From: Phaeosaccion multiseriatum
Taxonomy: Eukaryota; Protista; Ochrophyta, other classes
Direction: 5' to 3'
Assembly (NCBI GenBank): GCA_965112735.1
Contig: OZ218958.1
Coordinates: 124,001 to 188,000 of the forward strand
DNA length: 64,000 nucleotides
Shown here piece by piece: positions 10,742 through 29,493 of the stretch. Within the stretch, counting starts at the first letter, position 1; each line of letters starts with the position of its first letter. Position numbers and translations under genes: made by a program. Under the pieces are notes generated by a model that saw only the letters and a program-made list of their open reading frames with translations, made no database searches and was not told where the DNA came from.

Positions 10742-11615
10742 TATGATCAGCCCTCCTTGAGAGGGGGTGTTGTGTCTGTCCTCTGTTTCCTGTTTCTCAC
10801 ACGCACGCACACGCACACGCACACACACGTCAGTATGTGTTCAATTCGCTTCCGTCACTGCGGCTGCTTGCTTGACTCCCCAAGAGTGTGGGTAGACGTT
10901 CGGTTGCGCACTTTGGTGCAGCGATGATAAAACAAAACAAAACACCCTTGGAGAGATAGCTTGGGTGTTGACGGTATTTCTCTCTCTCTCTCTCTCAAGC
11001 CACGCACCGACGAGGTCGATGGGGTCCCACTTGGTCCCCTACCATAGCATCCATAGCATTACATCGGCTTGACCTTGCTTAGCTTGACCCGTGAGCGCCG
11101 GACCAGCGACTGTCAAGAGACCAGGCAAAACCGGAAGTGGGAGAGGAGCCTGCATCTTCACGGCCTCCTCATCCAGAGTCACAGATGGCCATCTCCGAGG
11201 GACTGGAGGGGAAGAACGAGCGTCTTGCCCCTCAAACACACACGCACATACGTAATTCTTGGGTTGATTCCTATAATCAATCCCCTGTGGCCGAAGAAGG
11301 GTTGCGGCTGTAGTATACGTTGAATGGAGGTCTTTCACTCGCGGCAGCCCTGCTGAGCCGAGGGGGCCTGTCTCACACCATAACACATATTCGCACCAGA
11401 TGCAAGTAACAGAGTAACAGATGGTGGGGCTCCATCACCAACTTTGGCAAAGCAAGGGCGGGTAGCGAACCCCCCACAACAGGACTCGAAGGCACGCATG
11501 AAGACTTGAAAGAGACGAAACGAATGTCAAAATGTGCATGTATTTTGTAGGGGAGGACAAATTCTCCCCGGGCTTTAGGGGAGGTTCTCCCCGGGCGAAG
11601 CCCGGGGAGAATTTG

Positions 11616-11771
11616 TGTTGAGATAAATCGATGTCGACACTAGATATCGATCTCATATCGCTGGTACAAGTCCGTTCACTTCTTCTTCTTTTAGTGTTAT
11701 GTAGCTAATAAGACGCTTTCCCACACTCGTGCAAGTACGACACCAGTCTCCAGGAGGGAGATATCCCAACA
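11616..11771 (+). repeat. 5' LTR (156 bp)
   Basis: TGTTG...CAACA ends; matches 15543-15698. Confidence 0.95.
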
Positions 11772-11893
11772 CGACAATTGTCGGTTGAAAGCTAATGCGC
11801 ATTAGTGCAGCGGTGGACGTAAAGTACGGGATGAGTACGGGAAGTTGAAACGGTCGGAGTAGACTTTAGCACTGGTGCGTCTGCCACGCTGCA

Positions 11894-13489
11894 TTGAGTA
11901 TGGCGGACCGACGAGTGTCTAGAGCTTCGAGGGAGAAGGCACGTCGTGCGATCAAGGAGCGGTGGCTCCGCGACCAAGAGAGCACGAGACAGGAGGGGGT
12001 TTTGAGTGGAAGGCAGGAGGGGCTACGAGCTGATTCAGCTCCTTCCGTCAGCATCCATTATGACTTGCGTAGGCGGTCAGGTATCGAACACTCAGACCTC
12101 TACCTGTGTGGGTTGCGTAGTGCCCAGGTGGGGCCCGCAACTGAATCCCCCAGGCGGGCAGCAGCGGTGAATCCCTCTGCTCGTAGCGGGAGCGGTGGCA
12201 GAGCGTCTACGCCTGCCATGTCTGGACTTAGGTCTGCTGCAGTGGCCAGTAGACCCACGGTGAAGTCCATCAGAGCTTCGAGAGAGGAGTCACGTCGTTG
12301 GCTCAAAGAGCGGTGGCTCCAGGATCAAGCGAGCAAGAAAAAGGATGGGGTTTTGAGTACTAGAAGGCCGGAGGAGCTTCGAGCTGATTCAGCTCCTTCC
12401 GGCAGCGGCTATGGCTTGCGTACGCGGTCTGGCATTGACTACAGAGAACTCCATCTGCGAGGGTTACGTAGTGCCCAGGTGGGGCCCGTAACGAACTCCC
12501 CCAGTCGGGCAGCAGCGGTGAATACCTCTGCTCGTAGCGGGAGCGGTGGCAGGGCTTTTACGCCTGCCATGTCTGGACTTAGGTCTGCTGTAGTGGCCAG
12601 TAGACCCACGGTGAAGTCCGTTTTGTCACAGTTGAATCAGATGGACGACGAGTCCATTGCAGCAGTGAAAGCAGCGTTGGCACGCATCATGAGGGATGCC
12701 GACGAGCGCTTCATGGACGCTGCAGAGGCACAAGAGAGCGAGGAGGCACCACCGGTTGTGGAAGCTCCTGCTCCACGTCGAGGCACTGTGCAAGACGCCA
12801 CGAATGAGGAACGGAGTGAGGAGGCACCAGGTTTGGAAGCTCCTGCTCCAGCCCGGAGTGAGGAGGCACCAGTCATGGAAGCTCCTACTCCAGCCCGGAG
12901 TGAGGAGGCACCAGTCATGGAAGCTCCTACTCCAGTTCGTGTGCAAGGCGAGGAATTCACTCAAGGAGTTTCTGCCGCGAACGATGACGATACCTTCGTC
13001 TTGAATGTAGACGGAGAAGGGGTTGAGGAGCCGGTGGTACCCGCACAAGGAGAAGGGGTTGAGGAGCCGGTGGTGCCCGACCACGAAGCCACGACATGCC
13101 CTACTGGGCAGAGCCGGCGACAGGCAGATGCGGTGGTGCGTGAGCAGTCCCAGCAACTATTGCGCAAGGAGGGGTGGAAGCGGTCCCAGCAGCGGCTACA
13201 CGAACAAGAGGTGGAGCACGAGGGGCCACAGCTACGTCTGAGGCAGGAGGTGAAGGAAGGCACAGGGGTAGTGGAAGAGACTGCGCCTCAGCGGCTTGGT
13301 CAACTATATCCTGGTCGGCTGGCACCAGCTGGTATTGGTACGGAATGGATATGGTTCCATGTGCGCTTCTGTTTTTTGGCTCAGGATGGCGATGCACCTC
13401 TTCAAGAGCATGAGGTGGTGTATGTGGAGCAGGACAAGGTCATACACATGAGGTGGTGTATGTGGAGCACGGCAAGGTCATGCGCTTGA
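11894..13489 (+). CDS. ORF1 of the LTR element (531 aa): internally duplicated N-terminus, E/A/P-rich repeats, degenerate RT N-terminal fragments at the C-terminus
   Basis: Open frame with a ~360-bp internal duplication and EEAPVMEAPTP repeats. C-terminal IGTEWIW and APLQEHEVVYVEQ resemble the Copia RT motifs IGTKWVF and EEVYVEQP. Confidence 0.5.
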   Translation: MSMADRRVSRASREKARRAIKERWLRDQESTRQEGVLSGRQEGLRADSAPSVSIHYDLRRRSGIEHSDLYLCGLRSAQVGPATESPRRAAAVNPSARSGSGGRASTPAMSGLRSAAVASRPTVKSIRASREESRRWLKERWLQDQASKKKDGVLSTRRPEELRADSAPSGSGYGLRTRSGIDYRELHLRGLRSAQVGPVTNSPSRAAAVNTSARSGSGGRAFTPAMSGLRSAVVASRPTVKSVLSQLNQMDDESIAAVKAALARIMRDADERFMDAAEAQESEEAPPVVEAPAPRRGTVQDATNEERSEEAPGLEAPAPARSEEAPVMEAPTPARSEEAPVMEAPTPVRVQGEEFTQGVSAANDDDTFVLNVDGEGVEEPVVPAQGEGVEEPVVPDHEATTCPTGQSRRQADAVVREQSQQLLRKEGWKRSQQRLHEQEVEHEGPQLRLRQEVKEGTGVVEETAPQRLGQLYPGRLAPAGIGTEWIWFHVRFCFLAQDGDAPLQEHEVVYVEQDKVIHMRWCMWSTARSCA

Positions 13490-14541
13490 AGGATGGCACT
13501 CTACGACAAGGTCATGTGCTTGAAGAAGGCGCTCTATGCATGGCGTTTGCATCAGGCATCCTCATTGTATTTGTTGATGATTTGTCCTGCGGAGGAAAGC
13601 AGGAGGTGGTGGACTGGCTCTTTACAGAGCTGGACAACAAGTTTTCGTTGAAGAGACTTGGGCCCAATGTTGATCAGTTTTTGGGAGTGCGCGTTGTGTT
13701 CAACCGGAGCGTAGGCACTGTCACATTGACATTGGAGCACTACATCAAGAAGATGATAGTGAAGTTTGGTTTGGAGTCTGATCGAGTTTACTCGACACCC
13801 GGTGTGTCTGGCACAGCACTCAGCAAGAGTATGGAGCCATCGTCTGCAGCTGATGTAGCTTTTATGACTGACAAGGACTACCCCGGTGTGGTGGGCGTTT
13901 TGATGTGGATCTCAAACTGGACAAGGCCTGATATTGCCTATGCTGTTCGAGAGTTGTCGCGGTATATGAAGAACCCCGGCCCTGAGCATTGGAAGCAGGC
14001 TATGCGTGTGTTTGGCTACCTGAAGGGTACTGTGGATCGTGCTTTGGTGTTTGGCAAGGGCGAGTGTGTTTTGGAAGCATATGCAGACGCGAATTACGCT
14101 GCATGTGTTGACACTCGCAGGAGTTCGACTGGTTATGCTTTGATGTACGGAGGTGCAGCTATCACTTGGGGTGTGCGATTGCAGCTGAGTGTGGCGATGT
14201 CTTCGCTGGAGAGCGAGTACATGGCAGCCAGTGACTGTGTGAAGGAAATATTATACATTAGGCAGGTATTGAGTTTCTTGTTCCCTGATGACTCGTCGAA
14301 GGCGACAGTTGTTTTTGAGGACAACATGGGGTGTATCAAGCTGGCAGAGAGCAATGCATCGACACGGAGGATGAAGCACATTGATGTTCGGTTTCATTTT
14401 CTGCAAGACGCAGTGAAGGAGGCTCTTATTGCATTTGAGTACGTGGCTTCGAAGGCGCAGCTGGCTGACCTTTTGACGAAGCATGTGACCCCGGCAGTAC
14501 TTGTAGCTTTACGTGAAAAGATGATGGGTTTTAGGGCGTAG
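13453..14541 (+). CDS. Truncated Copia reverse transcriptase (FVDD motif onward) plus RNase H
   Basis: Motifs IVFVDDL, QFLGVRV, TRPDIAYAV, HWKQAMRVFGYLKGT, YADANYA, SSLESEYMA, FEDNMGCI, KHIDVRFHFL, QLADLLTK. Confidence 0.93.
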   Translation: MVYVEHGKVMRLKDGTLRQGHVLEEGALCMAFASGILIVFVDDLSCGGKQEVVDWLFTELDNKFSLKRLGPNVDQFLGVRVVFNRSVGTVTLTLEHYIKKMIVKFGLESDRVYSTPGVSGTALSKSMEPSSAADVAFMTDKDYPGVVGVLMWISNWTRPDIAYAVRELSRYMKNPGPEHWKQAMRVFGYLKGTVDRALVFGKGECVLEAYADANYAACVDTRRSSTGYALMYGGAAITWGVRLQLSVAMSSLESEYMAASDCVKEILYIRQVLSFLFPDDSSKATVVFEDNMGCIKLAESNASTRRMKHIDVRFHFLQDAVKEALIAFEYVASKAQLADLLTKHVTPAVLVALREKMMGFRA

Positions 14542-14574
14542 TTAGCGGAATGGACAGTACCAGGCGAGGAGGTG

Positions 14575-14886
14575 TGTTGAGATAAATCGATGTCGACACT
14601 AGATATCGATCTCATATCGCTGGTACAAGTCCGTTCACTACTTCTTCTTTTAGTGTTATGTAGCTAATAAGACGCTTTCCCACACTCGTGCAAGTACGAC
14701 ACCAGTCTCCAGGAGGGAGATATCCCAACATGTTGAGATAAATCGATGTCGACACTAGATATCGATCTCATATCGCTGGTACAAGTCCGTTCACTACTTC
14801 TTCTTTTAGTGTTATGTAGCTAATAAGACGCTTTCCCACACTCGTGCAAGTACGACACCAGTCTCCAGGAGGGAGATATCCCAACA
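14575..14886 (+). repeat. Two head-to-tail LTRs (CAACA|TGTTG junction)
   Basis: 14575-14730 and 14731-14886; both carry the TTCACTAC variant where the outer LTRs have TTCACTTC. Confidence 0.95.
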
Positions 14887-15194
14887 CGACAATTGTCGGT
14901 TGAAATCTAATGCGCATTAGTGCAGAGGTGAACGTAAAGTACGGGATGAGTTCGGAGAGCTGAAACGGTCGGAGTAGATCTTAGCACTGGTGCGTCTGCC
15001 ACGCTGCATTGAGTATGGCGGACCGACGAGTGTCTAGAGCTTCGAGGGAGAAGGCACGTCGTGCGATCAAGGAGCGGTGGCTCCGCGACCAAGAGAGCAC
15101 GAGACAGGAGGGGGTTTTGAGTAGGAGGAAAGCAGGAGGTGTGTTGAGATAAATCGATGTCGACACTAGATATCGATCTCATATCGCTGGTACA

Positions 15195-15542
15195 GCCAGT
15201 GACTGTGTGAAGGAAATATTATACATTAGGCAGGTATTGAGTTTCTTGTTCCCTGATGACTCGTCGAAGGCGACAGTTGTTTTTGAGGACAACATGGGGT
15301 GTATCAAGCTGGCAGAGAGCAATGCATCGACACGGAGGATGAAGCACATTGATGTTCGGTTTCATTTTCTGCAAGACGCAGTGAAGGAGGCTCTTATTGC
15401 ATTTGAGTACGTGGCTTCGAAGGCGCAGTTGGCTGACCTTTTGACGAAGCATGTGACCCCGGCAGTACTTGTAGCTTTACGTGAAAAGATGATGGGTTTT
15501 AGGGCGTAGTTAGCGGAATGGACAGTACCAGGCGAGGAGGTG
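15195..15542 (+). pseudogene. Duplicated RNase H 3' fragment plus PPT
   Basis: Near-identical to 14227-14574. Confidence 0.9.
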
Positions 15543-15698
15543 TGTTGAGATAAATCGATGTCGACACTAGATATCGATCTCATATCGCTGGTACAAGTCC
15601 GTTCACTTCTTCTTCTTTTAGTGTTATGTAGCTAATAAGACGCTTTCCCACACTCGTGCAAGTACGACACCAGTCTCCAGGAGGGAGATATCCCAACA
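15543..15698 (+). repeat. 3' LTR (156 bp)
   Basis: Followed directly by TSD ATTTG. Confidence 0.95.
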
Positions 15699-15944
15699 AT
15701 TTGTCCTCCAAGCGAGTTAACGAGCGGGAGGGGAAACCTCCCTTCTTAATCCAGGGGGGTGCGTATTTTTTGCAAGGGGGCCCTTATCTCGAAAATGTCG
15801 CTGCGTGCCTGGCTGCGCGCCCTTTTTCGTACTGTAGACGGTCTTTCTCCACACACACTCCTCGGCGGACCGAGCTTCTTTCACCAGCAGGCGCACCGAA
15901 AAAAGCGCTATCAATCCTCCCAGGTACTTCCCACCCCGTGGCGG

Positions 15945-16608
15945 ACTGTGGGGCGAGAAAAATGCCCTAAACTAGGTCTTTAAAAGACTTTGCGGAAAAA
16001 TGGCACGGGCATGGACCACCAGCACCAGCTCCCTCACACCGCGGCAGCAGCAGCAGCAGCTCCACAGCAGCTTCAGCTTTCTCATCAGGTACACCAGGAC
16101 TCGCTCTGCCCTGCTGTGCCGCCCGCACGAATGGATACTGGGGAAGAAGAAGGGGGAGGCAGGTTCTTCTCCTGTGAGGAGGAGGGAGTTCGAAGAAGGG
16201 CACCGACATTAATGGATACAGGTGGGGGGGGGGTGGGGAAACAGCCCAAGGCAGCGGTGGATTACCACGTCCCACCACTGTGGGGCGAGAGAAATGCCAT
16301 AAACTAGGTCTTTAAAAGACTTTGCGGAAAAATGGCACGGGCATGGACCACCAGCATCAGTTCCCTCACAACTCGGCAGCAGCAGCAGCAGCACCACAGC
16401 AGCTTCAGCTTTCTCATCAGGTACACCAGGACTCGCTCCGCCCTGCTGCGCCGCCCGCACGAATGGATACTGGGGAAGAAGAAGGGGGAGGCAGGCTCTT
16501 CTCCTGTGAGGAGGAGGGAGTTCCAAGAAGGGCACCGACATCAATGGATACAGGTGGGGGGGTTGGGGAAGCAGCCCAAGGCCGGTGAATTACCACGTCC
16601 CACCACTC
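15945..16608 (+). repeat. Two diverged direct copies of a ~332-bp unit containing a Gln/Ala-rich coding-like remnant
   Basis: Units start ACTGTGGGGCGAGA at 15945 and 16277. Confidence 0.85.
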
Positions 16609-17732
16609 CGCCAAAGGGCACTGCATACTGGCTGCTGCTGCTGCTGCTCTCGGCCAACAAGCGACAGGGGGGGGGGGGGAAGAGTGGAGGATTAGCCCAG
16701 CCATGACACCCCACCACTCCGCCACTCTGATCCTTTACCCCGACACCGGCAAGGACGTCAGCCGCTAGGAGTATCGCCTCAGCCACAGCCACCACCGCCA
16801 GCAGGAGGGCCTGCAGCAGCTGCTGTGCCGCCCCCACCACACGGCCACCAGCCAAGCCAACCACGACTCAGACCCACCAGGCAGAGAGAGGCTCCCTCCC
16901 CCGGCAAGGCTGCTTTCTCAGGAGTACTACGTTGCCTCCACCACGACGGCAGACGCGAGTGGCAACCAGCCAGGGAAGACGCGGAGGCAGTAGACTAGAG
17001 GGAGGGGGGATATGCACCAGCAGAGGCAGGGCGAGGCAGGGCAGAGGTGGAGGCAGAGGCAGCATTCTAGAACGGATGGCCGCACATGCTGCAGTGGAGA
17101 GAGCAAGGGTCAGCAGGCTCAGTCCCGGTACAGCTGTATTACGGAGGACGACACGTGCTGTAGCGGTCCCGCAGAGGTCACGAGTCCGCAACAGCCCCAG
17201 TCTCACCACGACACCTCGAGCACGGAGAGGACGGCACGTGGTGCAGGGCAGAGATCACGAGTCAGCAACCTGCCAGAGGCCCGGTACTGCTCGAGCACGG
17301 AGGACGAGACGTGCTGTAGCGCAGCAGAGCAAAGGGTGATAGCTGCGAGCCTGCCTGGCTCGATGGTGTGGCTGGTCGGTGCTAACGACAATGTTCTTTC
17401 GGAGGAGGAGCGCGGCGTGCCAGTCCAGTGCCTGCACGCATTGCCGGCACCGTCGGGATGATGCCTCTCCAGTTCGAGCAGCAGCGGCTACAGATCATTG
17501 GTTAGCTCAGTAGCTTCAGTTCCTTACGTAAACTTACGTAAATATGTACCTATTGGCTGCTTTTGGCTGTGTATAGGCCGCGTTGTTGGCCCTGCAGTGG
17601 CTGTCTTAAAACGTAGGCTCCACAAGAAATACTACCACAGCTTGCCTGACGCAGTTACGGGAGAACCTCCCCTATCACGCTCTTCTTGTAAGTATAGACT
17701 AACCCGTGACCCGTTTCCTTTTTTTCTTCCAG

Positions 17733-19400
17733 GGCAGCTTCAGCTCATGGACTGCGAAAACATGGAATACTATGGACAGATCGCCTTGGGCACACCCCCG
17801 GTACGTTTGCGACAAGATGCATGCGTGCATTTCTCTTCCTTCCTCTCTTTTCTCTCTGTCTTCCGCAAACCTTCGTCTCCCTCTCTCACTCTTCGCTCTG
17901 TTGCCATCCTCACTCCCCACACAGGTTTCCTTCAACGTGCTGTTCGACACGGGGAGTGCAGACCTGTGGGTCCCCTCCGTTTCCTGCACCGACGGTTGTG
18001 ACGCAGGTCAGAAACTCTACGATTCCTCCGCCACGTCCACCTACGAGCCCGTCGGTACCCCTTTTGCAGCTGAGTACCAAGATGGCACCACCGCCAGAGG
18101 CTTTCTGTCCATCGACGTGTTGGAGTGGGGCGGGGTCGCGGCGCCCGTCACGTTCGGGGAGCTGGCCTCTCTGACCCTGGTGGGCGGTTGTGGGGGTGTG
18201 GATGGTGTGATGGGACTGGGCTTCACGGAGCTGTCTACCACCCAAACCATGCCGCCCTTCGGCGAGCTGGTGGAGCAAGGGGTGGTGCCTTCCGGGGTCT
18301 TTGGGGTGTACCTTGGGGACATTGACGTCGACGAGGCAGCAGGAGCAGCAGCAGCTTTAGACGGGGCGGTCATGAAAGGAGAGCTGACGCTGGGAGCGGT
18401 GGACCAGAGCAGGTACGAGGGGTGTCTCCATTGGTGTGACGTGCCGCTCTTCACCAGCTTCGGTCTAGGGTATTGGTCGGTGGTGATTGACTCGCTGCGC
18501 GTGGGGGGAGGCAATGCGCCCGTGACGACGGGACCGAGTGAGGCAATGGTGGACACAGGTACCAGCATGCTCATAGGACCGTATGCTGCCATCGGAAAGG
18601 TGGCCGACCAGCTGGGACAAGTCTTGTGCTTTATGGTGGAGGAAGGGGTGTACGGCCGCTCAAGCTCAGCCGTAGAGAAAACTGTGGACTGTGGGGAGGC
18701 TGGAGCGATCCTCGCTGTGGAATGCTCTCAACCCCTGGGCACCATCGAAATGGAAGTCGGAGGAATGATGCTTTCGCTGTCGGGGAGCGATTTGGTCATA
18801 CCATTGGACGACTTTTTAACCACTGACAGCGAGTCGGAAGGAACCGATGCCTTGTGTATTGTTGCCATGCAGGGGCAGGAAGGCGACGCCTGGATACTCG
18901 GGGACACGTTCTTGAGACAGTACTACACGGCCTTTGACTACTCCAATAGGAAGATTGGCTTCGCTGAGTCGGTAGAGAGTGGAGAGAGGCAGTCCGATCT
19001 GTGTGAGGCTGACTTGAGTATTTCGATCCACCACGAGACGCCCAAGGGAGGGAGGGACGGAGGCGGAAGGGCAGGCGACAATGGCGCTGCAGCAGGGACC
19101 ACGGCACCATCGCCAGAGCGGGGAGGAGGCGGAGGGGGCCGGGGTAGCGCTGGTTCACCACCTCCTCCCACTGAGACGCCTCAGACTACGACATCGACCA
19201 GCCCTGTGGTGCCGACAAGTAGTAATGTCATGTCCAACGGTACAGCGGCTTGTCTAGGGGCGGCGGGGGCCAGCCTCGCCATCCTGCTTGTGGTGCTGCT
19301 CGTGAGGGAGTTTAAGCGCTTTGGTGGGCCTGGGGCCTCCTCCCGCCTCGGACACAGCCGCTTGCAGCAAGATCAAGAGCACGAGCATGAGCACGAGTAG
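17733..19400 (+). CDS. Pepsin-family (A1) aspartic protease with C-terminal S/T/P stalk and transmembrane helix; 5' end uncertain
   Basis: Exons 17733-17800 (NMEYYGQIALGTPP) and 17925-19400. Both catalytic motifs present (FDTGSADLWV, VDTGTS), plus WILGDTFLRQYYTAFD and TM segment ASLAILLVVLLV. A possible upstream exon 17458-17500 is phase-compatible but has no signal peptide. Confidence 0.9.
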   Translation, partial: GSFSSWTAKTWNTMDRSPWAHPRYVCDKMHACISLPSSLFSLSSANLRLPLSLFALLPSSLPTQVSFNVLFDTGSADLWVPSVSCTDGCDAGQKLYDSSATSTYEPVGTPFAAEYQDGTTARGFLSIDVLEWGGVAAPVTFGELASLTLVGGCGGVDGVMGLGFTELSTTQTMPPFGELVEQGVVPSGVFGVYLGDIDVDEAAGAAAALDGAVMKGELTLGAVDQSRYEGCLHWCDVPLFTSFGLGYWSVVIDSLRVGGGNAPVTTGPSEAMVDTGTSMLIGPYAAIGKVADQLGQVLCFMVEEGVYGRSSSAVEKTVDCGEAGAILAVECSQPLGTIEMEVGGMMLSLSGSDLVIPLDDFLTTDSESEGTDALCIVAMQGQEGDAWILGDTFLRQYYTAFDYSNRKIGFAESVESGERQSDLCEADLSISIHHETPKGGRDGGGRAGDNGAAAGTTAPSPERGGGGGGRGSAGSPPPPTETPQTTTSTSPVVPTSSNVMSNGTAACLGAAGASLAILLVVLLVREFKRFGGPGASSRLGHSRLQQDQEHEHEHE

Positions 19401-19776
19401 CACGGGGGTGTGGTAGATTGTCCTGCCTGAGGGTTTCCGGTCACACATTCTGGGGTATAATAAGAATGTCGGTTTCCTAGGCACGCCCCGAGGGGGTTCA
19501 ACGGCTCTAGCGTTTCACCCTCCTCTTTGTGGGCACAAGCTTTGCATCAGCAAGTAGTAGAGATATATTATCAATACGGACACTGACGCCCCACCATAGG
19601 CGCAGCATATACTTAGTCCAAACCCCGCAACGTTTCTACTATCTTAGCTTAGCACAGGGGCCATTAGAGAGAGGCGTTGCTTTCGCACATGCCTCTGCTT
19701 TTGGTCACTCTGACACACCGTTCTGTGCTGCACGTGTTAAAGACAAAGTCAAAATAGTAAAAATTAATTCTTCTTC

Positions 19777-22700
19777 TCAGGCATTCGCCCTGTGGTGATA
19801 GCACAGGCCTCCTTTTCGGGCGTCGCTGCCACAGCCTTCTATGCTGCACTTCTTCCTTGCCCCGTGCTTGCCGCACAGGCCTCCTTTTCGGGCGTCTCTG
19901 CCACAGCCTTCTATGCTGCACTCATCCGTTCCCCCGTGCTGGCGGCACAGGCCTCTTTTTTGGGCGTCTCTGCCACAGCCTTCTATGCTGCACTTCTTCC
20001 TTGCCCCGTGCTTGCCGCACAGGCCTCCAGTTATGGCAACGTTGGCACAGCCTTCTATGCTGCACTCCTTCCTTTCCCCGTGGTGATAGCACAGGCCTCC
20101 TTGTGCGGCCACTCTGCCACAGCCTTCTATGCTGCACTTCTTCCTTGCCCCGTGCTTGCCGCACAGGCCTCCAACTCTGGCAACGTTGGCACAGCCTTCT
20201 ACACTGCACTTCTTCCTTTCCCCGTGGTGACAGCACAGGCCTCCTTGTCGGGCCACTCTGCCACAGCCTTCTCTGCTGCACTTCTTCCTTGTATGTACCT
20301 TCGGCTTCGCCGCGGGTGATGCCTCGCTGCTGGCGGCCTCCTCTCGGCTGCTGCTGCCGCCGCCGGCGGGTGGTGGTGGCTTCAAGTTGCTGCCGAGTCT
20401 AGGCTTCTTTTTGGCGGGGCTGCGTGGTGGTGGCGGGGACGTGGACGGTGATCGCGCCCTCTTTCTCCCTTCTGGTCCAGCTGGTGCTGGTGCTGGTGCT
20501 GGTGCTGGTGCTGCTGCCTGCTCCTGCGGCCTTCCCTTGGCACGCAATCGGCCCGCCAAGCCACCGTGGTGACTCGCTCCTCCTCCTCCTCCTCCTCCTC
20601 CTCCTCCTCCTCCTCCTCCCCCGTCTGTGTCGCCCTCCTGCTGCTGCTCCTGCTGCTGCTCGACGACTTGGATGTGCGTGCGTGCGTGCGTACATACCAT
20701 GCATGCATTCATGCGAGGAGAGGGAAGAGAGCAGAGTGTGGTAGCGGCAGCGGTGAGGTGAGGTGTAACGGCTGCAGCAGGCCAAGTGTTGCCGACAAAC
20801 AACAGAACCATCGAGTATTCACTTGATTTGGCACATCGCGTATCTTCACTCACGACCACTTACTCGCCTACTCACTCACCCGCACGTACCCCCCCGCGCC
20901 CCGCTGGCCCTGCCGTGCCCGCCGGCAATCCTCCTCCCCCAGCTCCACCGCCCAGTATGGATGAAGACAGTTCCCTCCGGTCCGTGTCGCCCCCCTGCTG
21001 CTGCTCGACGACTTGGATGTGCGTGCGTGCGTGCGTACATACCATGCATGCATTCATGCGAGGAGAGGGAAGAGAGCAGAGTGTGGTAGCGGCAGCGGTG
21101 AGGTGAGGTGTAACGGCTGCAGCAGGCCAAGTGTTGCCGACAAACAACAGAACCATCGAGTATTCACTTGATTTGGCACATCGCGTATCTTCACTCACGA
21201 CCACTTACTCGCCTACTCACTCACCCGCACGTACCCCCCCGCGCCCCGCTGGCCCTGCCGTGCCCGCCGGCAATCCTCCTCCCCCAGCTCCACCGCCCAG
21301 TATGGATGAAGACAGTTCCCTCCGGTCCGTGTCGCCCCCCTGCTGCTGCTCGACGACTTGGATGTGCGTGCGTGCGTGCGTACATACCATGCATGCATTC
21401 ATGCGAGGAGAGGGAAGAGAGCAGAGTGTGGTAGCGGCAGCGGTGAGGTGAGGTGTAACGGCTGCAGCAGGCCAAGTGTTGCCGACAAACAACAGAACCA
21501 TCGAGTATTCACTTGATTTGGCACATCGCGTATCTTCACTCACGACCACTTACTCGCCTACTCACTCACCCGCACGTACCCCCCCGCGCCCCGCTGGCCC
21601 TGCCGTGCCCGCCGGCAATCCTCCTCCCCCAGCTCCACCGCCCAGTATGGATGAAGACAGTTCCCTCCGGTCCGTGTCGCCCCCCTGCTGCTGCTCGACG
21701 ACTTGGATGTGCGTGCGTGCGTGCGTACATACCATGCATGCATTCATGCGAGGAGAGGGAAGAGAGCAGAGTGTGGTAGCGGCAGCGGTGAGGTGAGGTG
21801 TAACGGCTGCAGCAGGCCAAGTGTTGCCGACAAACAACAGAACCATCGAGTATTCACTTGATTTGGCACATCGCGTATCTTCACTCACGACCACTTACTC
21901 GCCTACTCACTCACCCGCACGTACCCCCCGCGCCCCGCTGGCCCTGCCGTGCCCGCCGGCAATCCTCCTCCCCCAGCTCCACCGCCCAGTATGGATGAAG
22001 ACAGTTCCCTCCGGTCCGTGTCGCCCCCCTGCTGCTGCTCGACGACTTGGATGTGCGTGCGTGCGTGCGTACATACCATGCATGCATTCATGCGAGGAGA
22101 GGGAAGAGAGCAGAGTGTGGTAGCGGCAGCGGTGAGGTGAGGTGTAACGGCTGCAGCAGGCCAAGTGTTGCCGACAAACAACAGAACCATCAAGTATTCA
22201 CTTGATTTGGCACATCGCGTATCTTCACTCACGACCACTTACTCGCCTACTCACTCACCCGCACGTACCCCCCCGCGCCCCGCTGGCCCTGCCGTGCCCG
22301 CCGGCAATCCTCCTCCCCCAGCTCCACCGCCCAGTATGGATGAAGACAGTTCCCTCCGGTCCGTGTCGCCCCCCTGCTGCTGCTCGACGACTTGGATGTG
22401 CGTGCGTGCGTGCGTACATACCATGCATGCATTCATGCGAGGAGAGGGAAGAGAGCAGAGTGTGGTAGCGGCAGCGGTGAGGTGAGGTGTAACGGCTGCA
22501 GCAGGCCAAGTGTTGCCGACAAACAACAGAACCATCGAGTATTCACTTGATTTGGCACATCGCGTATCTTCACTCACGACCACTTACTCGCCTACTCACT
22601 CACCCGCACGTACCCCCCGCGCCCCGCTGGCCCTGCCGTGCCCGCCGGCAATCCTCCTCCCCCAGCTCCACCGCCCAGTATGGATGAAGACAGTTCCCTC

Positions 22701-25700
22701 CGGTCCGTGTCGCCCCCCTGCTGCTGCTCGACGACTTGGATGTGCGTGCGTGCGTGCGTACATACCATGCATGCATTCATGCGAGGAGAGGGAAGAGAGC
22801 AGAGTGTGGTAGCGGCAGCGGTGAGGTGAGGTGTAACGGCTGCAGCAGGCCAAGTGTTGCCGACAAACAACAGAACCATCGAGTATTCACTTGATTTGGC
22901 ACATCGCGTATCTTCACTCACGACCACTTACTCGCCTACTCACTCACCCGCACGTACCCCCCCGCGCCCCGCTGGCCCTGCCGTGCCCGCCGGCAATCCT
23001 CCTCCCCCAGCTCCACCGCCCAGTATGGATGAAGACAGTTCCCTCCGGTCCGTGTCGCCCCCCTGCTGCTGCTCGACGACTTGGATGTGCGTGCGTGCGT
23101 GCGTACATACCATGCATGCATTCATGCGAGGAGAGGGAAGAGAGCAGAGTGTGGTAGCGGCAGCGGTGAGGTGAGGTGTAACGGCTGCAGCAGGCCAAGT
23201 GTTGCCGACAAACAACAGAACCATCGAGTATTCACTTGATTTGGCACATCGCGTATCTTCACTCACGACCACTTACTCGCCTACTCACTCACCCGCACGT
23301 ACCCCCCGCGCCCCGCTGGCCCTGCCGTGCCCGCCGGCAATCCTCCTCCCCCAGCTCCACCGCCCAGTATGGATGAAGACAGTTCCCTCCGGTCCGTGTC
23401 GCCCCCCTGCTGCTGCTCGACGACTTGGATGTGCGTGCGTGCGTGCGTACATACCATGCATGCATTCATGCGAGGAGAGGGAAGAGAGCAGAGTGTGGTA
23501 GCGGCAGCGGTGAGGTGAGGTGTAACGGCTGCAGCAGGCCAAGTGTTGCCGACAAACAACAGAACCATCGAGTATTCACTTGATTTGGCACATCGCGTAT
23601 CTTCACTCACGACCACTTACTCGCCTACTCACTCACTCACTCGCCTACTCACTCGCGCACCCACTCACCGACATGTACCCCGCGTTGCACAGACTCCCTC
23701 TTGCGCGTCTTCTTGACTAGATCGTATGCGACGTGGAGGCGGGAGGATTCTCTATTCACAGCATCGCAAGAGGGGGGGGCAGACGAGGGTGCGAGCCCCC
23801 CAACAGCTGCCCCTGCGCTGCCCGTCCGCTTCTTCCTGCTGCTACTACTACCGGCAGCGGCGGGGGTGGACTGCTGCTGCCGCTGTTCCTGCTGGAGCTG
23901 CTCCAGCTGCCGCTGGTGCCGCTGCTGCAGCTCCCGCTTGTGCCGCTGCAGCTCCCGCTGGTGCCGCTGCAGCTGCCCCCGCTCTTCCTGCTGCTGTAGC
24001 ATCAACTGGTGCTGCTCCTCCCGGTGCCGCTGCTGGTGCTGCTCCTGCCGCGCTGTCTCAGCCTTGAGCAAATCCGCGTCTTCGCGGCGGCATTTCGCCA
24101 GCAGCGATTCCAGCTCTTCTTCCTGTGTCATGCCCATCACCTCATCAATGTACTGCCGCCTCTTGGCGGCGTCGTTCGTCCTCTTGATGCTAAAGGGTGC
24201 GGTGTCGAATATCGCTGTTGGAGACACACACGGGAAGCAAGAGGCAGCCAGAAGAAGCAAAAGCAAACGAATGAGAAAGGAGGCAAACAGTCATGAAGAT
24301 GGTGCAAAAGCAGGTGTGTTCCCCTACAGCCTCATTCATCGCTTTACCCTCCCCCGGCACGTTGAGGTGGTAGCATCACACACACCCCATGTCCCCGATA
24401 CCTTGAGGTGGCACACATGGGGTCTGCCCCTGCTCTTTGTATCTTTGCACCTTTGCATATAGGTTACAGAGGCACATACCTTTCTCCATCATTCTGTCTT
24501 GCCGCGGTGTAACCCTCTCCCAAGCCTCAGCGTGTGAGATGTCCCAGTCCTCCATTTCCCTTAGAACTAAGGCTTCGTCCTGCATACACCATGGCATACC
24601 TTGCAAAAGTAGGAAAGGAATACAGAAAGGCAGGACAGGACGAGGTAAAGTCAGTAAGACAGTAAGCCAGTAAGCCTCACTACCCCACTACCTCACTGCC
24701 CCCCTGCCTCACTACCTCACTACCTCTACAATCAGACAGTCAGGCAGTCAGACGCACCCACCTGGCTGCCCCTTGGAGCTGGGTCTCATGCCACCCCCCA
24801 TCCTCAGACCCAGCCCGTGCTTGCACTCCCCCGTCACCATGCCCCCGTCGAAGCGTGAGTATTGACCTTTGAAGTATTCTCCCGTCGCCATATTTACCAA
24901 GAGGAGGACAGCGCAATACACGAAACTATCCGCCCTCAGAAAACACCAGTGGCCGCTCTTTGTTTTGAAGGTCAGCTGAAGAAGGGGTACGGCTCGTTCC
25001 CAGTTGTTCCAGATCCCGGGAAGCATAAGGCCCACAACATGCTTGTGATGTGTGCACCTGTCATCCCCCTCAGCAACTGCGCCTACCAGTGCGTCGTTCA
25101 GCCTGAGGATCATGGTAGCACTGACTTCGGTAAAGCCATGCTTGGCCTGCTCTGCTCTCTCCGTCCCATCGACTATCCCGCATACAGAGCCGTCCAGCAA
25201 GCCGTCCGTATGCCCCGCATAGGCGACGGTACCATTCGGTACCCCCAAGTCGTGCACTGGCCCCATACGTTGATTGTTCTGCACAAAATTGATAGCGAGG
25301 GCCTTCACCCTCTCCCCTGGTGGTGCTCCTTGCTCGAAAATGGGCATATGCTCCCCCACCGCGGCCCCATGCTTGTCCCATAGCTCCCGCTGGAACTCCT
25401 CCTTCGAATAGACGTCGAAAGCACCACGAAGCCTCCCTGCGTCATTCCGGTTGAAGTACTTCCCATTCCGAATCACCTCTGCTACAAAATCAGGGGGGCA
25501 GTTCGCAAACCTCATGCCCCCCACTCTGCTGGGGACGGGCCCCTCTTTCTCCTTGTCAGGCAGTTGTCGTTTCTCAGGGTCAGGAATCGGCCAGTCTTCA
25601 TACTGCCTGGCTGCATCAGCGACTGCAGCGCGGATACGCATCTCTCGCACAAGACCGGTTCCGTCTGAACCAGTCTCCCTCACAACGTTGGGCCCTTGCA

Positions 25701-26739
25701 GTCGTCCCTGTCGTACCTGCGCAACAAAGAGAGGGATGGGTGAGAGAAAGACTCTCTACCGCGGTCGTAAACAAGTTGCTGGGGCATGGCCCCTCTTTTC
25801 TCCCTAGGTAAAATAGATACAGTACGACCGCGGTAGAGAGTCTTTCTCTCACCCATCCCTCTCTTTGTTGCGCAGGTACGACACGCACTGCAAGGGCTGA
25901 AGGGCCCAACGAGTAATAAAAAAGTGAGAAAAAAAATAGAGGGGAAACTGAAACTGAGAATCCCTCCTTCCGTGTAATACTAATAATGCTTGCTTGCTTT
26001 GCTTTGTGAACACATACCTGAATCCCTACCTCCTCCGGCGAGGGGGGCGACGAGGGGGCTTCGTGGATGGGGGGGGGGTGACCTCGCTCACGCTCGTGTG
26101 CTTCGACTGCGCGCGACGGATGATAAGGGGGAGGGGTTCTTGTCCGGCTGGGGCACGACGCGAGAGGGTGAGGAGACGGGGTGGGCGGGAGGCAAGAGGG
26201 GTGCACGAGGGGCAGGAAGGGAGATAAGAGACTGCAGCAGGGGTGCCTCCGGTAGCGGCCAATATATAAGGAGTCGTTAGCTCGTTACGCACCATCCAGG
26301 AGCGCTGAATGGTTTATAGCGAGGGTTTTAAAGTATGCACATAAGAGGAACGATTGGCATCGCTGTCAAGCTTTTTCCTTCGCGAGCAGTTGATCAGGCT
26401 GGCCCGCCATGATTTTTGTTCGTCCTCCCTTCCGGCCCGCTGGACTCTAAAACCTCTCGCTCACCTCTCTTCGTCGGAGCGATGCTGCTCATCTGCGTTG
26501 TGATGACCTTCTAGCTCCGCCCAGGCCCGCCTGGTTGCCGGGGCTTCTGCGACTTGGTCTAACACTTGGCCCATCAGTCCATTGAGGTCAAACACGTTCG
26601 CGTCGAGCTCCTCTTCACACAAGGCGTTGAGCTCGGCAGGTGAGAGGGCCAGGGAGCCGTCCCCACCGGGGCAAGATTCACACTCCTCATCATGATGGCT
26701 CCCCGCAGGAGGATGAGAGGAGGAGTCGCAGTGTGACAT
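19777..26739 (-). CDS. 14-exon, ~1322-aa protein: putative AlkB-like 2OG-Fe(II) domain, Gln-rich coiled coil, 8 tandem repeated exons, 7 WRKY19-like CCCH zinc fingers
   Basis: Exons 26739-26465, 26147-26018, 25716-24762, 24599-24480, 24214-23669, 23423-23293, 23079-22948, 22734-22604, 22390-22259, 22045-21915, 21701-21570, 21356-21225, 21011-20880, 20666-19777. All junctions are GT-AG; total 3969 nt with no in-frame stop. Exon joining is a hand model without transcript support. Confidence 0.65.
19790..20285 (-). repeat. 72-bp coding minisatellite: 7 x C-x4-C-x9-C-x2-H fingers
   Basis: Translated units CS(R/V/I)EGC-x6-(G/R)GLC-x2-H with a 24-aa period. Confidence 0.9.
20648..23640. repeat. 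Near-identical 345/344-bp tandem array (~8.6 units), each unit a 132/131-nt exon plus a 213-nt intron on the minus strand
   Basis: Units differ by a C7/C6 homopolymer (7,7,7,6,7,6,7,6) and one visible SNP near 22192. Confidence 0.95.
25686..25911. repeat. Inverted repeat (~60-bp perfect core, 25709-25769 vs 25823-25883) covering the acceptor at 25717
   Basis: TGTCGTACCTGCGCAACAAAGAGAGGG...CCGCGGTCGTA and its reverse complement. Confidence 0.9.
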
Positions 26740-27639
26740 GGTGCACCACAAGGGCCTGACTGCGGGCCGAGCGAAAGGGGACAGGATGCATGGAGTCGAG
26801 AGCGAAGCAAGGGGATTGAGGGTGGGGAAGCAAAGGGCGGAGTGGAGAAAACTTTTGGATAGAGGGGGCGAAGAGAAGGCCAGCTAACACGATGAGGGGA
26901 GAGAGGGGAGGGTGCTCGTGTCTGTCTCGTTCTTCCGCGGAAGATCCGCAGTCTCGTTCTAGTCTCGAAGATTTGACTCTCAGAACACTCTCTCACCTCT
27001 CTTGCGTCGTTACAGGTGAGGGCGGGTAGCGATGTGCTCCTCAGTCCACCCAAACAGCAGCTGCGATACAGCGCTGGCTGAGCGACCTAACGCCACGAGT
27101 AGCCACGAGCCACGAACGCTGACCTCAAGCGCGACCCGCCCTGCAAGCCCCTCGCAGCCGGGGCTAAGACGAATGCGCGGCCCGGGGGCACTCGCTGCTG
27201 CCGCTGCTGATGCTCTTCTACCCGCCGTGCTGCTGGCTCCCAGGCTTCCTATTATTATTTTCTAAACCTCCCCAAAAAAAATGGCTCGCGGCCGGGATTG
27301 GAGGCAGGGCTCAACATTACTATTACGTAAGGCATTACTTCATGTATAACAAAAACGAAGGAGACGGAGAGCCATCAGCACAAGGCCTCCACCTCCAAGC
27401 CTCCCGCCCCCATACACAACCTCTACACCGCAGTCGTGGGTTACAATGTCTACACCATCAATCACGGACGGCCCTCTTCGCCTCATCGTGTTGCTTCACG
27501 CGGATAGCCTGGAGGTAAGGATCCGTGGGGTGGGGATGAGTGGAGCGCAGCTCATCCTCACCAACCTCTCTCCCTCTGCTCTTGCACCCACCTCACCTTC
27601 TCCCCCCCCTCCTCCTCTCTATTGCTGCGCTCTCCTCAG

Positions 27640-28329
27640 GCGTGGTGGGGTCTATGAAGGGCCTGCGCTTCACCCTCATAGCCTCCTTGCTGCTGCAGAT
27701 GGTGACTCTGGGGGGCCTCATGCTCACTGACACGGTGTTCGGTGACCTCGAAGATGCGCGAGGGCAGAAGAGGCTCCAGGCCACGGTGTACATCACTGCG
27801 TGGCAGGCGCTGGCGGTTAGAGGTGGGCAAGGAGCCAGGCTACTCCAAAGTGTCCAAAGCGCGAGCAAGCTCCAAAATTACGCTCATGACGTTGCACGAC
27901 TTGAAGCTACGCTTGGAAGGAGGAGGAGAAGGCGCGACAGCAGGAAGCATTGAGGAGTACAAGCCAGACGTGAAGATCACCTCCTTCTCCAGTGGCTACG
28001 GCGGCAACTCCAAGAGGCTGCGTGAGTTGGCATCGGCAGAAGATAGGGCACGCGCGGCGGGGTATGGGCCGGCAAGCCTCACCCAAGAGCCCGACCATAC
28101 CCCCCCGGCGGCACCGACCACGAAGGCGAACAAGAAGAACCCTGCGGCAAGACGACCGGCGGCGGCGACAGCCACACACACCAAGGGCAAGGCCGCGCCC
28201 AAGAAGAAGGCCTCGCCTCGTGTCAAGAAGCGAAGAGCAGCAGGGGAGGACGGAGGAGGCGAGACGAACAAGCCCCCCGGGAAGAAGCGCAGAGCCAGAA
28301 TCATCGTCATCGACGATGATTCCGAGTAG
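27640..28329 (+). pseudogene. Degenerate BRCT-domain gene with a basic low-complexity tail
   Basis: MKGLRFTLI in one frame and VGKEPGYSKVSKARASSKITLMTLHDL in another resemble the N- and C-terminal halves of RFC1/ligase-type BRCT; frameshift near 27810; recognised by eye only. Confidence 0.45.
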
Positions 28330-28837
28330 TCCATGTCGAGATGGTCGATAATATGTCGAGATGGTCGATAATGTCGACATGTCGATGTGTCGATATATGC
28401 CTGCTCGGCGCCGAGCTGGGGAATGTTCTTAATCTTCGGGGGTTGAGGGGAGATAAAGTGCAGAGCTTTGCGAGACGGGGAGGTGATCGATCCAGGGGGG
28501 GCGGAGGGAGGAGGGAAGGGCATGTCTTGTACAAAGGGGGGGCGACACAGCCACAAGGGGAAGGTAGCGCTTGGAGTCTCAGCAGCAGCAACAGCAGCAG
28601 CAACAGCAGCAGCAACAGCATCCAGAGAGCCAGATTCTGCCCATCAAGGGAAGGCAGGAAGAGAAGAGAAGAGAAGGGAAGGGAAGGGAGGGCTGGAGAC
28701 GGGAGGGGAGGGAGGCCCAGACATGTCCGGGCCTGTGCCACTTACTATGGACGGGTTGTGGTTTCATCAGTGCCAGTCAGAGCACGGGGAGAGGGAGAGA
28801 GAGAGAGGGGAGGTGGGGGGGGGGATGCTACTATGGA

Positions 28838-29493
28838 CTATTGGGAGGATGAGAAGACGTCCTCAGTCCCACAAGTTGCTCTGTCGGCGCACCACCCCGC
28901 TTTGACTGCGGGCTTGCCGCAGTCCACAGCCTTGCAAGCGAAGCCCCAATCCGCCTCAGCCCTGCTCACAATCCCCTTCAACCCCCCGCACTTCGCTCTG
29001 TCCTGGCAGAATTCTTTGCCTACGGCCGCGACCTTCTTGCAGTGCGGAGCCACGCACGAGCCCCTTTCTTCCACCAGATGCTCAAGACAAAGATGGGAAA
29101 CCCGGTGCCTCGTTGCCCCGCAATCGGGCTTCGCGCATGGCTTCCCGACTTGCGAGTGCTTGTGGCACAGCTGTCCGATTTCTCGTTCGGACTCACACCC
29201 TTCGCGTGTACATACGCCCCGAGACCGGCGGACACCGCTGCACCGTCCGCACAACCCCTCCCTCACCACTTGGTTCTGGGGGCATCCCTCAGCCGTCCGC
29301 CCTGGGCAGAGCGCGCGCGTCGATTCGGTTCGGTTCGGTGCAAGCACTTCCAACACTCTTGCTTGTACGCAACCGTCTTTCTCTTCTTACATTTCGAGCA
29401 GGTCTTCCTATGCCTCTGTAATCTTGCGTTCTCGGCGTCTTTTTGTTCCCTGGTTTTGCGCGGCTTCTCCTTCTTCCCCTTCCCCTTACCCAT
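28838..29493 (-). pseudogene. Paralog of the 8868 zinc-finger gene with the same frameshift and additional C-terminal Cys clusters
   Basis: Near-identical to 8868-9340, then continues KEFCQDRAKC...CKAVDCGKPAVKAGWC. Confidence 0.7.

What the first reader, a model, noticed from the sequence alone, without database searches (positions are those of the whole stretch)
20667..23668. Eightfold exon+intron array whose three 1-nt deletions cycle through all frames and restore the ORF
Seen: each 345-bp unit is a symmetric phase-1 exon (132 nt, CCAAG| ... |GTGAGT) plus a 213-nt intron. In transcription order the exon lengths are 131,132,131,132,131,132,132,132 because of a G6/G7 run. The exon has no TAA, TAG or TGA in any frame, so the spliced mRNA reads it in all three frames and returns to frame after exactly three deletions, keeping the fingers. 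Inference: copy-number change, exon skipping or homopolymer slippage would switch the finger module on or off, like a contingency locus. The regular 6/7 alternation suggests a real 689-bp higher-order unit rather than random error.
Basis: partly seen in the sequence, partly recalled or inferred. Interest (0 to 1): 0.75.

Follow-up and report, generated by a model that had tools for sequence, protein, structure and literature searches.

The report
Repeated exon-plus-intron spacer in finger gene
An algal gene carries eight near-identical copies of one small exon with its intron, a known way to lengthen a protein; three copies lack one G, a difference that may be real or an assembly flaw, and nothing shows that it works as a switch.

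Summary
On the minus strand, 23423-20667 is eight head-to-tail units of 344/345 bp. Each is a 131/132-nt stop-free exon (AAG| ... |GTGAGT) plus a 213-nt intron. The exon lengths run 131,132,131,132,131,132,132,132, because a G run is 6 or 7 long. The units differ at only one other base.

The array sits in a phase-1 intron position of an orphan gene: a large N-terminal domain, a coiled coil, this spacer, then seven Zf_WRKY19 fingers.

A roughly 98% identical paralogue on contig 12 has three identical units, all G7. Its three exon differences are all silent in the frame set by the flanking exons. So the cassette was probably a coding exon of 132 nt that encodes a Gly-rich 44-residue spacer.

The other claims are weak:
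- Stop-freeness in three frames occurs in 10-13% of windows of this genome.
- Return to frame has a chance of about 1 in 3.
- The alternation has P of about 0.07.
- Joining the flanking exons directly is also in frame.

Ordinary homopolymer noise is unlikely, because 0 of 21 other runs differ between the paralogues. An artefact specific to the array is not excluded. I found no transcript, read or relative to test exon inclusion.

Verdict: a young tandem exon duplication made by unequal crossing-over. The switch idea is unsupported.

The parts
24762..25683 (-). Large exon encoding an orphan N-terminal domain. Its 5' boundary and the upstream exons are not resolved. It ends ...CCA G|GTGGGT in phase 1.
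   Evidence: Open frame. No Pfam family. No hit among 1.84 billion representative proteins. Two other copies in the genome, 96% and 33% identical.
24480..24599 (-). 120-nt exon (MPWCMQDEALVLREMEDWD...MMEK), phase 1 at both ends, AAG| acceptor.
   Evidence: Read from the sequence. The contig 2 paralogue has a homologous stretch just before its fingers.
23669..24214 (-). Upstream exon: Q/R/E-rich coiled-coil-like stretch. Its tail ...QRGVHV is a decayed half finger. It ends in phase 1.
   Evidence: Translation. Its tail, the donor and the preceding QQQ(S/P)TPAAAG...GGLAPSS stretch match the contig 6 finger gene, where the intron splits GGVCV|xHG.
23424..23668 (-). First intron, 245 nt. It is the unit intron plus 32 extra bases of GTGAGT-like repeats.
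23293..23423 (-). Cassette exon 1, 131 nt, G6 run at 23302-23307, followed by a 213-nt intron.
22948..23079 (-). Cassette exon 2, 132 nt, G7 run at 22957-22963, followed by a 213-nt intron.
22604..22734 (-). Cassette exon 3, 131 nt, G6 run at 22613-22618, followed by a 213-nt intron.
22259..22390 (-). Cassette exon 4, 132 nt, G7. Its intron carries the only substitution in the array (T instead of C at 22192).
21915..22045 (-). Cassette exon 5, 131 nt, G6 run at 21924-21929, followed by a 213-nt intron.
21570..21701 (-). Cassette exon 6, 132 nt, G7, followed by a 213-nt intron.
21225..21356 (-). Cassette exon 7, 132 nt, G7, followed by a 213-nt intron.
20880..21011 (-). Cassette exon 8, 132 nt, G7, followed by the last 213-nt intron (20879-20667).
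19777..20666 (-). Last exon. Its first 18 nt are identical to those of the cassette exon, and the similarity continues to about 40 nt after a 12-nt CAG-rich insert. Then come poly-Gly, (AP)n, a basic linker and seven Zf_WRKY19 fingers (72-bp repeats at 19790-20291), with the stop at 19779-19777.
   Evidence: Pfam PF24906 at E=1.1e-25 with 7 stretches. Translation. Alignment of the exon head.

Best explanation
The array is a young tandem duplication of one exon together with its intron, made and resized by unequal crossing-over inside a phase-1 intron position of a recently duplicated orphan gene. That gene encodes an N-terminal domain, a coiled coil, a spacer and Zf_WRKY19 fingers.

The cassette exon is, or recently was, coding. 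At 132 nt (G7), in the frame fixed by the flanking exons, it adds a 44-residue Gly-rich, probably disordered spacer ([43 protein letters not shown]) between the coiled coil and the fingers. With short identical introns, each intron is most likely removed, so all eight exons would be included (inferred).

I judge the three G6 units more likely real than artefact, at about 55:45. The likeliest history is one slippage in a G7 run, followed by copying of a two-unit (G6+G7) block. This would have happened in a gene copy that is redundant with its contig 12 twin and shows relaxed constraint.

On that reading, the return to frame after three deletions is luck helped by a G-rich, stop-poor exon. It is neither a selected device nor a switch.
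For: Anatomy and phases.

The same cassette occurs in the paralogue on contig 12 as three identical 366-bp units, all G7. So the cassette is not an assembly invention, and its copy number changes (8 versus 3). The finger number changes too (7 versus 10).

All 3 exon differences between the two arrays fall on codon position 3 of the predicted frame and are silent (P = 0.037).

The intron is about 69% similar to one at the same position, splitting GGVCV|xHG, in a finger gene on contig 6. That gene has a G8 run in the same place. The cassette tail RGGVRA is therefore a decayed half finger read in the G7 frame.

The first AG after the pyrimidine tract is the proposed AAG| acceptor, and only this acceptor puts the fingers in frame.

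For the G6 units being real: outside the array, 0 of 21 homopolymers of 6 or more differ between the two paralogous copies over about 9 kb. The contig 12 units are identical to the base, including a (CA)n tract. A uniform error model has a joint probability of at most 7e-4. The order 6,7,6,7,6,7,7,7 is what block duplication would give.

For relaxed constraint: the N-terminal exon shows 12 non-synonymous against 4 synonymous differences, spread evenly over the codon positions.
Against: No transcript, read or protein evidence could be reached. The N-terminal exon has no hit in 1.84 billion representatives. The genomic ORF over a unit has no hit. The spliced-junction and genomic patterns have no hit in metagenome contigs.

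Variation confined to a homopolymer in otherwise identical tandem units is the classic signature of long-read consensus or polishing trouble. The paralogue has only G7.

The alternation alone is not significant (P = 0.07). The silent-substitution argument rests on three events. The gene as a whole shows little purifying selection, so the cassette or the whole copy may be decaying.
Confidence: 0.45

Rival explanations
1. The cassette array is the same, but the three G6 runs are artefacts specific to the array: consensus or polishing errors in identical tandem units, or a consensus that flips between two haplotypes. In that case the true array is eight 132-nt in-frame exons and no frame cycling occurs.
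For: The only variable exon column is a homopolymer. The paralogue's three units are all G7. G7 is the state that keeps the frame in which the substitutions are silent. Short reads cannot be placed uniquely in a 2.8-kb array of identical units (general knowledge).
Against: None of the 21 other runs of 6 or more differ between the paralogous copies. The other G6 run at the start of the exon is constant in all eight units. The contig 12 array is base-perfect. The window holds G/C runs of up to 18 bases, which to my knowledge is unusual for an unpolished nanopore consensus. Random errors give the strict alternation only 7% of the time.
Confidence: 0.35
2. One reading: the G6/G7 pattern is a maintained device. 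The mRNA reads the same exon in all three frames, and slippage, copy-number change or exon skipping toggles the finger module like a contingency locus.
For: The arithmetic is right. The exon is open in all frames, and three deletions restore the frame. Frames 0 and 1 of the last exon hit stops after 94 and 88 codons, so a net shift would remove the fingers. Copy number does differ between the paralogues.
Against: Return to frame is expected by chance about one time in three. Stop-free windows make up 10-13% of this genome window. The paralogue has no G6. The silent substitutions point to a single frame. A run of 6-7 bases is short for a hypermutable tract (general knowledge). The gene has no evident role under fluctuating selection. 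No population or transcript data exist.
Confidence: 0.05
3. The cassette exons do not reach the mature mRNA. Either they are skipped or the whole 3-kb stretch acts as one intron, or this contig 9 copy is a decaying pseudogene. In either case the frame of the cassettes is irrelevant.
For: Joining 23669 directly to 20666 is in frame. The N-terminal exon evolves at omega of about 1 between the copies. No trace of the gene's protein is present in very large public protein sets. A frameshifting variant can persist if the exon is not used.
Against: The donors and acceptors of all units are identical to those that must work at the array's two ends. The gene's other introns are 120-270 nt, so a 3-kb intron would be atypical. 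All three substitutions in the cassette are silent in frame. All exons of both copies remain open.
Confidence: 0.15

Closest known systems
Tandem exon (exon-plus-intron cassette) duplication, as in the one-repeat-per-exon LRR arrays of brown-algal ROCO / NB-ARC candidate receptors (PMC3341825, PMC11378527)
   Same: The units are head-to-tail and each holds one symmetric-phase exon plus a homogenised intron. Copy number differs between paralogues. The units within one array are more alike than those between arrays, which fits concerted evolution or recent expansion.
   Different: The cassette here encodes a low-complexity Gly-rich spacer, not a folded repeat. There are no hypervariable codons. 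Three units carry a 1-nt deletion, which those arrays are not reported to tolerate.
Bacterial contingency loci (phase variation by slippage in simple-sequence tracts)
   Same: A homopolymer inside coding sequence whose length sets the reading frame of a downstream module.
   Different: The tract is only 6-7 bases, in a eukaryote, with eight copies in one gene. No variation between cells or isolates is shown, and no link to a surface or defence function. The resemblance is only arithmetical.
Higher-order repeats of satellite DNA
   Same: A two-unit (689 bp) super-period is detectable.
   Different: The super-period rests on one variable column, covers only three of the four pairs, and lies inside a gene.

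Membership tests
Tandem exon-plus-intron cassette array | Head-to-tail units, each with a complete exon bounded by an acceptor AG and a donor GT, plus an intron | tested here: met
   Eight units, each CACATCCAAG|exon|GTGAGT plus a 213-nt intron.
Tandem exon-plus-intron cassette array | Symmetric intron phase and an exon length that is a multiple of three, so any number of copies stays in frame | tested here: inconclusive
   Met by five units (132 nt, phase 1-1) and by all three units of the paralogue. Not met by the three 131-nt units as assembled.
Tandem exon-plus-intron cassette array | Evidence that the exon is coding in the frame set by its neighbours | tested here: met
   It is open in that frame. 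All 3 differences from the paralogue fall on third positions and are silent (P = 0.037). This is modest evidence. A codon-usage test gave no signal.
Tandem exon-plus-intron cassette array | Exons present in the mature mRNA | not testable with these tools
   No transcript or protein of this gene was found.
Contingency locus | A hypermutable simple-sequence tract whose length varies between cells or isolates | not testable with these tools
   Only one assembly is available. The tract is 6-7 G, and no other genome or metagenome copy was found.
Contingency locus | A change in tract length switches the product on or off | tested here: inconclusive
   On paper a net shift ends in stops 88-94 codons into the last exon, before the fingers. 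This depends on exon inclusion and on the G6 runs being real.
Higher-order repeat (689 bp) | A multi-unit period supported by more than one independent variant position | tested here: not met
   Only the G-run column alternates. The single other variant is private to unit 4. Alternation P = 0.07.
Zf_WRKY19 zinc-finger proteins (Pfam PF24906) | Score above the Pfam gathering cut-off, with repeated CxxxGC...GLCxxHG units | tested here: met
   89.5 bits against a cut-off of 27, in seven stretches.
Tet/JBP or AlkB-type 2OG-Fe(II) dioxygenase (for the N-terminal domain) | Profile match and a conserved HxD...H iron-binding triad | tested here: not met
   No Pfam hit at E<=1. The language-model look-alikes carry Tet_JBP at a score of only 0.82, below the level the tool calls reliable. 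The H of 'GHTDG' is L in the contig 12 copy and K in the contig 2 paralogue. The structure model was unusable, at pLDDT 30.

The most novel reading that the evidence does not exclude
The G6 units are real and the cassettes are spliced in. One polypeptide then reads the same 132-nt exon in all three frames in turn: frame 2, then 0, then 1, then back to 2. A disordered spacer tolerates this, and the DNA-binding fingers stay attached. A second perfect GTGAGT donor lies 4 nt downstream. Using it would make each G6 exon 135 nt and put it in frame on its own, so splice-site choice could also compensate for the deletions.
Probability: 0.25. Interest if true: 0.5.

Novelty: new member of a known kind. 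Interest (0 to 1): 0.3.

Why it matters
As a cassette array it is one more example of how this alga, like brown algae, lengthens proteins by copying an exon with its intron. Here the same spacer occurs in 8 and 3 copies in two young gene twins. If accurate reads confirm the one-base differences, and cDNA shows that the exons are used, it would be a clean natural case of a repeat read in three frames within one protein. It would also show how stop-poor, GC-rich exons buffer frameshifts. If the differences are artefacts, it is a useful warning that homopolymers in tandem arrays of this assembly need checking before frame-based inferences are drawn.

Tried and rejected
1. Word search of the 5.8-billion-protein set with the 110-residue genomic ORF over one unit gave no hit. 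This left no independent copy of the G6 or G7 variant.

2. Exhaustive HMMER search of 1.84 billion representatives with the N-terminal exon gave no hit, not even to itself. So no annotated or transcript-derived protein of this gene is in reach. For that reason I ran no further search on the other exons.

3. An exact-pattern scan of metagenome contigs for the spliced junction (upstream exon or cassette joined to the cassette or last exon) gave nothing. A scan for the genomic G-run context also gave nothing.

4. A codon-usage and GC3 test of the three frames of the cassette was uninformative. This genome shows almost no position-specific composition in long ORFs.

5. I tested whether the cassette exon is a simple chimera of the downstream exon head and the upstream exon tail. 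Only the first ~40 nt (score 46 against shuffles of 19±3) and the last ~15 nt match. The middle ~75 nt has no significant source.

6. Introner or mobile-intron idea: the unit has matches at only three loci in the genome, so I rejected it.

7. The structure prediction of the N-terminal domain from a three-sequence alignment was unusable (pLDDT 30), so I ran no fold search.

8. I tried to calibrate homopolymer fidelity in other tandem arrays of the genome.

9. Exons were handled separately, by reference.

10. The contig is not human; it is a GC-rich stramenopile alga according to the scan's notes.
Full report
WHAT IS THERE

TRF reports a 345-bp period with 8.7 copies and 99% matches at 20649-23636. 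Read on the minus strand and parsed by script, the stretch 23423-20667 is eight head-to-tail units of 344 or 345 bp.

- Each unit begins right after CACATCCAAG, holds an exon ending ...GTACGTGCGG, then GTGAGTGAGT... and a 213-nt intron.
- The exon lengths in transcription order are 131,132,131,132,131,132,132,132. One search printed them one base short because my donor offset was off by one.
- Only two alignment columns vary: a G6/G7 run nine bases before the donor, and one C/T at 22192 in the intron of unit 4.

THE GENE AROUND IT

The array lies in a minus-strand gene whose last four intron positions are all phase 1. From the large exon downstream, the gene reads:

- A large exon ending at 24762, encoding an orphan domain.
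- A 120-nt exon (24599-24480).
- A Q/R/E-rich coiled-coil-like exon (24214-23669).
- The array.
- A last exon (20666-19777) with poly-Gly, (AP)n, a basic linker and seven Zf_WRKY19 fingers (Pfam PF24906, 89.5 bits).

Three points follow from the frames.

- The upstream exon leaves one base over, and the last exon reads its fingers from offset 2. A 132-nt cassette is therefore a symmetric phase-1 exon.
- A direct join of the two flanking exons is also in frame.
- The proposed AAG| acceptor is the first AG after the pyrimidine tract. It is the only nearby AG that puts the fingers in frame; the CAG repeats just downstream all give a frame that stops after 88 codons.

I did not resolve the exons upstream of 25700.

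RELATIVES INSIDE THE GENOME

The window is C9:124001-188000 of a 67-Mb, 22-contig assembly. The scan's notes call it a stramenopile alga. It is not human.

The unit occurs at three loci only.

Contig 12:
- It carries a near-twin of the whole gene. Window 9337-28853 aligns to C12:457548-469341 at 94-99% identity, and the window copy is interrupted at 11165-17678.
- This twin has three cassette units of 366 bp. The extra 21 bases are a (CA)n-containing insert in the intron.
- The three units are identical to the base and all carry G7.
- Its cassette exon differs from the window's at three positions. All three are third codon positions of the predicted frame and are silent, so the 44-residue peptide is identical. 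The chance of 3/3 is 0.037.
- The twin also has 10 fingers where the window copy has 7.

Contig 6:
- A different Zf_WRKY19 gene has an intron about 69% similar to the unit intron.
- That intron sits in the homologous place. It splits a finger between GGVCV and xHG, in phase 1, with a G8 run just upstream of the donor.
- The QQQ(S/P)TPAAAG...GGLAPSS stretch before it also matches the window's upstream exon.
- So the tails ...QRGVHV (upstream exon) and ...RGGVRA (cassette) are decayed half fingers, and G7 is the state that reads them in frame.

Contig 2:
- A distant paralogue (33% identical in the N-terminal domain) joins that domain to the fingers with no cassette.
- The domain-plus-fingers architecture is therefore older than the spacer.

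ORIGIN OF THE CASSETTE

The first ~40 nt of the cassette exon match the head of the last exon (score 46 against shuffles of 19±3). The last ~15 nt match the tail of the upstream exon. The middle has no significant source.

This fits an old duplication across the intron, followed by divergence. Recent amplification came after that:
- Units within the window array are more than 99.9% identical.
- The two arrays differ by 2.3% in the exon.
- Each array carries its own private variants in every unit.

This pattern is what unequal crossing-over and concerted evolution produce.

HOW MUCH OF THE FRAME STORY EXCEEDS CHANCE

- A 132-nt stretch with no stop in three frames occurs in 3.8% of shuffles of this G-rich exon, but in 10-13% of all 132-nt windows of this 60% GC region.
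- Given some number of 1-nt deletions among eight units, a net multiple of three is expected 18-33% of the time.
- The strict alternation has P = 4/56 = 0.07. With long periods allowed, TRF does report a 689-bp period, but it rests on one column only.

None of this calls for a selective explanation.

ARE THE G6 RUNS REAL?

Evidence against ordinary consensus noise:
- Over about 9 kb of paralogous alignment outside the array there is not one single-base homopolymer difference, although the aligned stretches hold 21 runs of 6 or more.
- The other G6 run of the cassette is constant in all units.
- The contig 12 array is base-perfect.
- A uniform per-run error rate that could give three short runs in eight has a joint probability of at most 7e-4 with that concordance.

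Evidence for an artefact:
- Homopolymer-only variation in identical tandem units is exactly where consensus and polishing fail.
- The twin has only G7.
- A consensus flipping between two haplotypes would give the same mosaic.

I put real against artefact at about 55:45.

IS THE CASSETTE USED?

Inferred, not shown.
- In favour: the splice sites are identical to those that must work at both ends of the array, the introns are short (120-270 nt elsewhere in the gene), the phase is symmetric, and the substitutions are silent in frame.
- Against, or unknown: no transcript or protein of this gene is within reach of the tools.
- The N-terminal exon evolves at 12 non-synonymous to 4 synonymous differences between the twins, spread evenly over the codon positions. 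One copy may therefore be under little constraint.

If the G6 runs are real and the exons are included, the frames would run as follows:
- Exon 1: frame 2.
- Exon 2 and most of exon 3: frame 0.
- Exon 4 and most of exon 5: frame 1.
- Exons 6-8: frame 2.

Use of the second, equally perfect GTGAGT would make a G6 exon 135 nt and in frame on its own, with no stop (read). This is an untested alternative route to an intact product.

VERDICT

This is a young tandem exon-plus-intron duplication encoding a repeated spacer, a known kind that other notes report as common in this genome and that is described for brown-algal receptor genes (PMC3341825, PMC11378527).

The contingency-switch reading is unsupported. 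The frame cycling is either a neutral accident in a redundant gene copy or an assembly flaw, and reads across the G runs will decide which.

Each exon was analysed by reference.

Noticed in passing
window 9337-28853 and G000:C12:457548-469341 (L011, L016-L019): The whole gene lies in a segmental duplication of about 13 kb, 94-99% identical. The window copy carries an extra 6.5 kb at 11165-17678, the region where another note places a Copia element. The twins differ in finger number (7 against 10) as well as in cassette number (8 against 3).
   Followed up: partly
window 8868-9343 (+) and 29022-29493 (-): A 476-bp inverted repeat, 96% identical, brackets the contig 9 copy of the duplicated segment almost exactly. 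The contig 12 copy lacks it; the only other match is a partial one 200 kb away on contig 12. This could mark how the segment was copied or inserted.
   Followed up: partly
window 24762-25683 (-): The N-terminal domain is an orphan. It has no Pfam family and no hit in 1.84 billion representative proteins. The language-model look-alikes carry Tet_JBP / 2OG-Fe(II) families, but only at a score of 0.82. The candidate HxD (GHTDG) is not conserved in the two paralogues. Between the twins the domain evolves at omega of about 1.
   Followed up: partly
L012:5400-6200 (+), G000:C6 about 1695400-1696200: Another Zf_WRKY19 gene has a homologous phase-1 intron splitting a finger, with a long run of GTGAGT-like repeats at the 5' end of the intron. 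The upstream coding stretch matches the window gene's upstream exon. The window gene therefore looks like a chimera of a finger gene and the orphan domain.
   Followed up: partly
window 26402 against C12: A C8 run is present in the contig 12 copy and wholly absent from the window copy. The window as a whole is unusually rich in G/C homopolymers: 80 runs of 6, 43 of 7, and some up to 18.
   Followed up: no
L012:6570-6600 and L012:7540-7560: The word CAGTTGGTGATACA(G/A), embedded in CAG repeats, appears twice in the contig 6 locus. It matches the dispersed 15-nt element described in another note on this genome.
   Followed up: no
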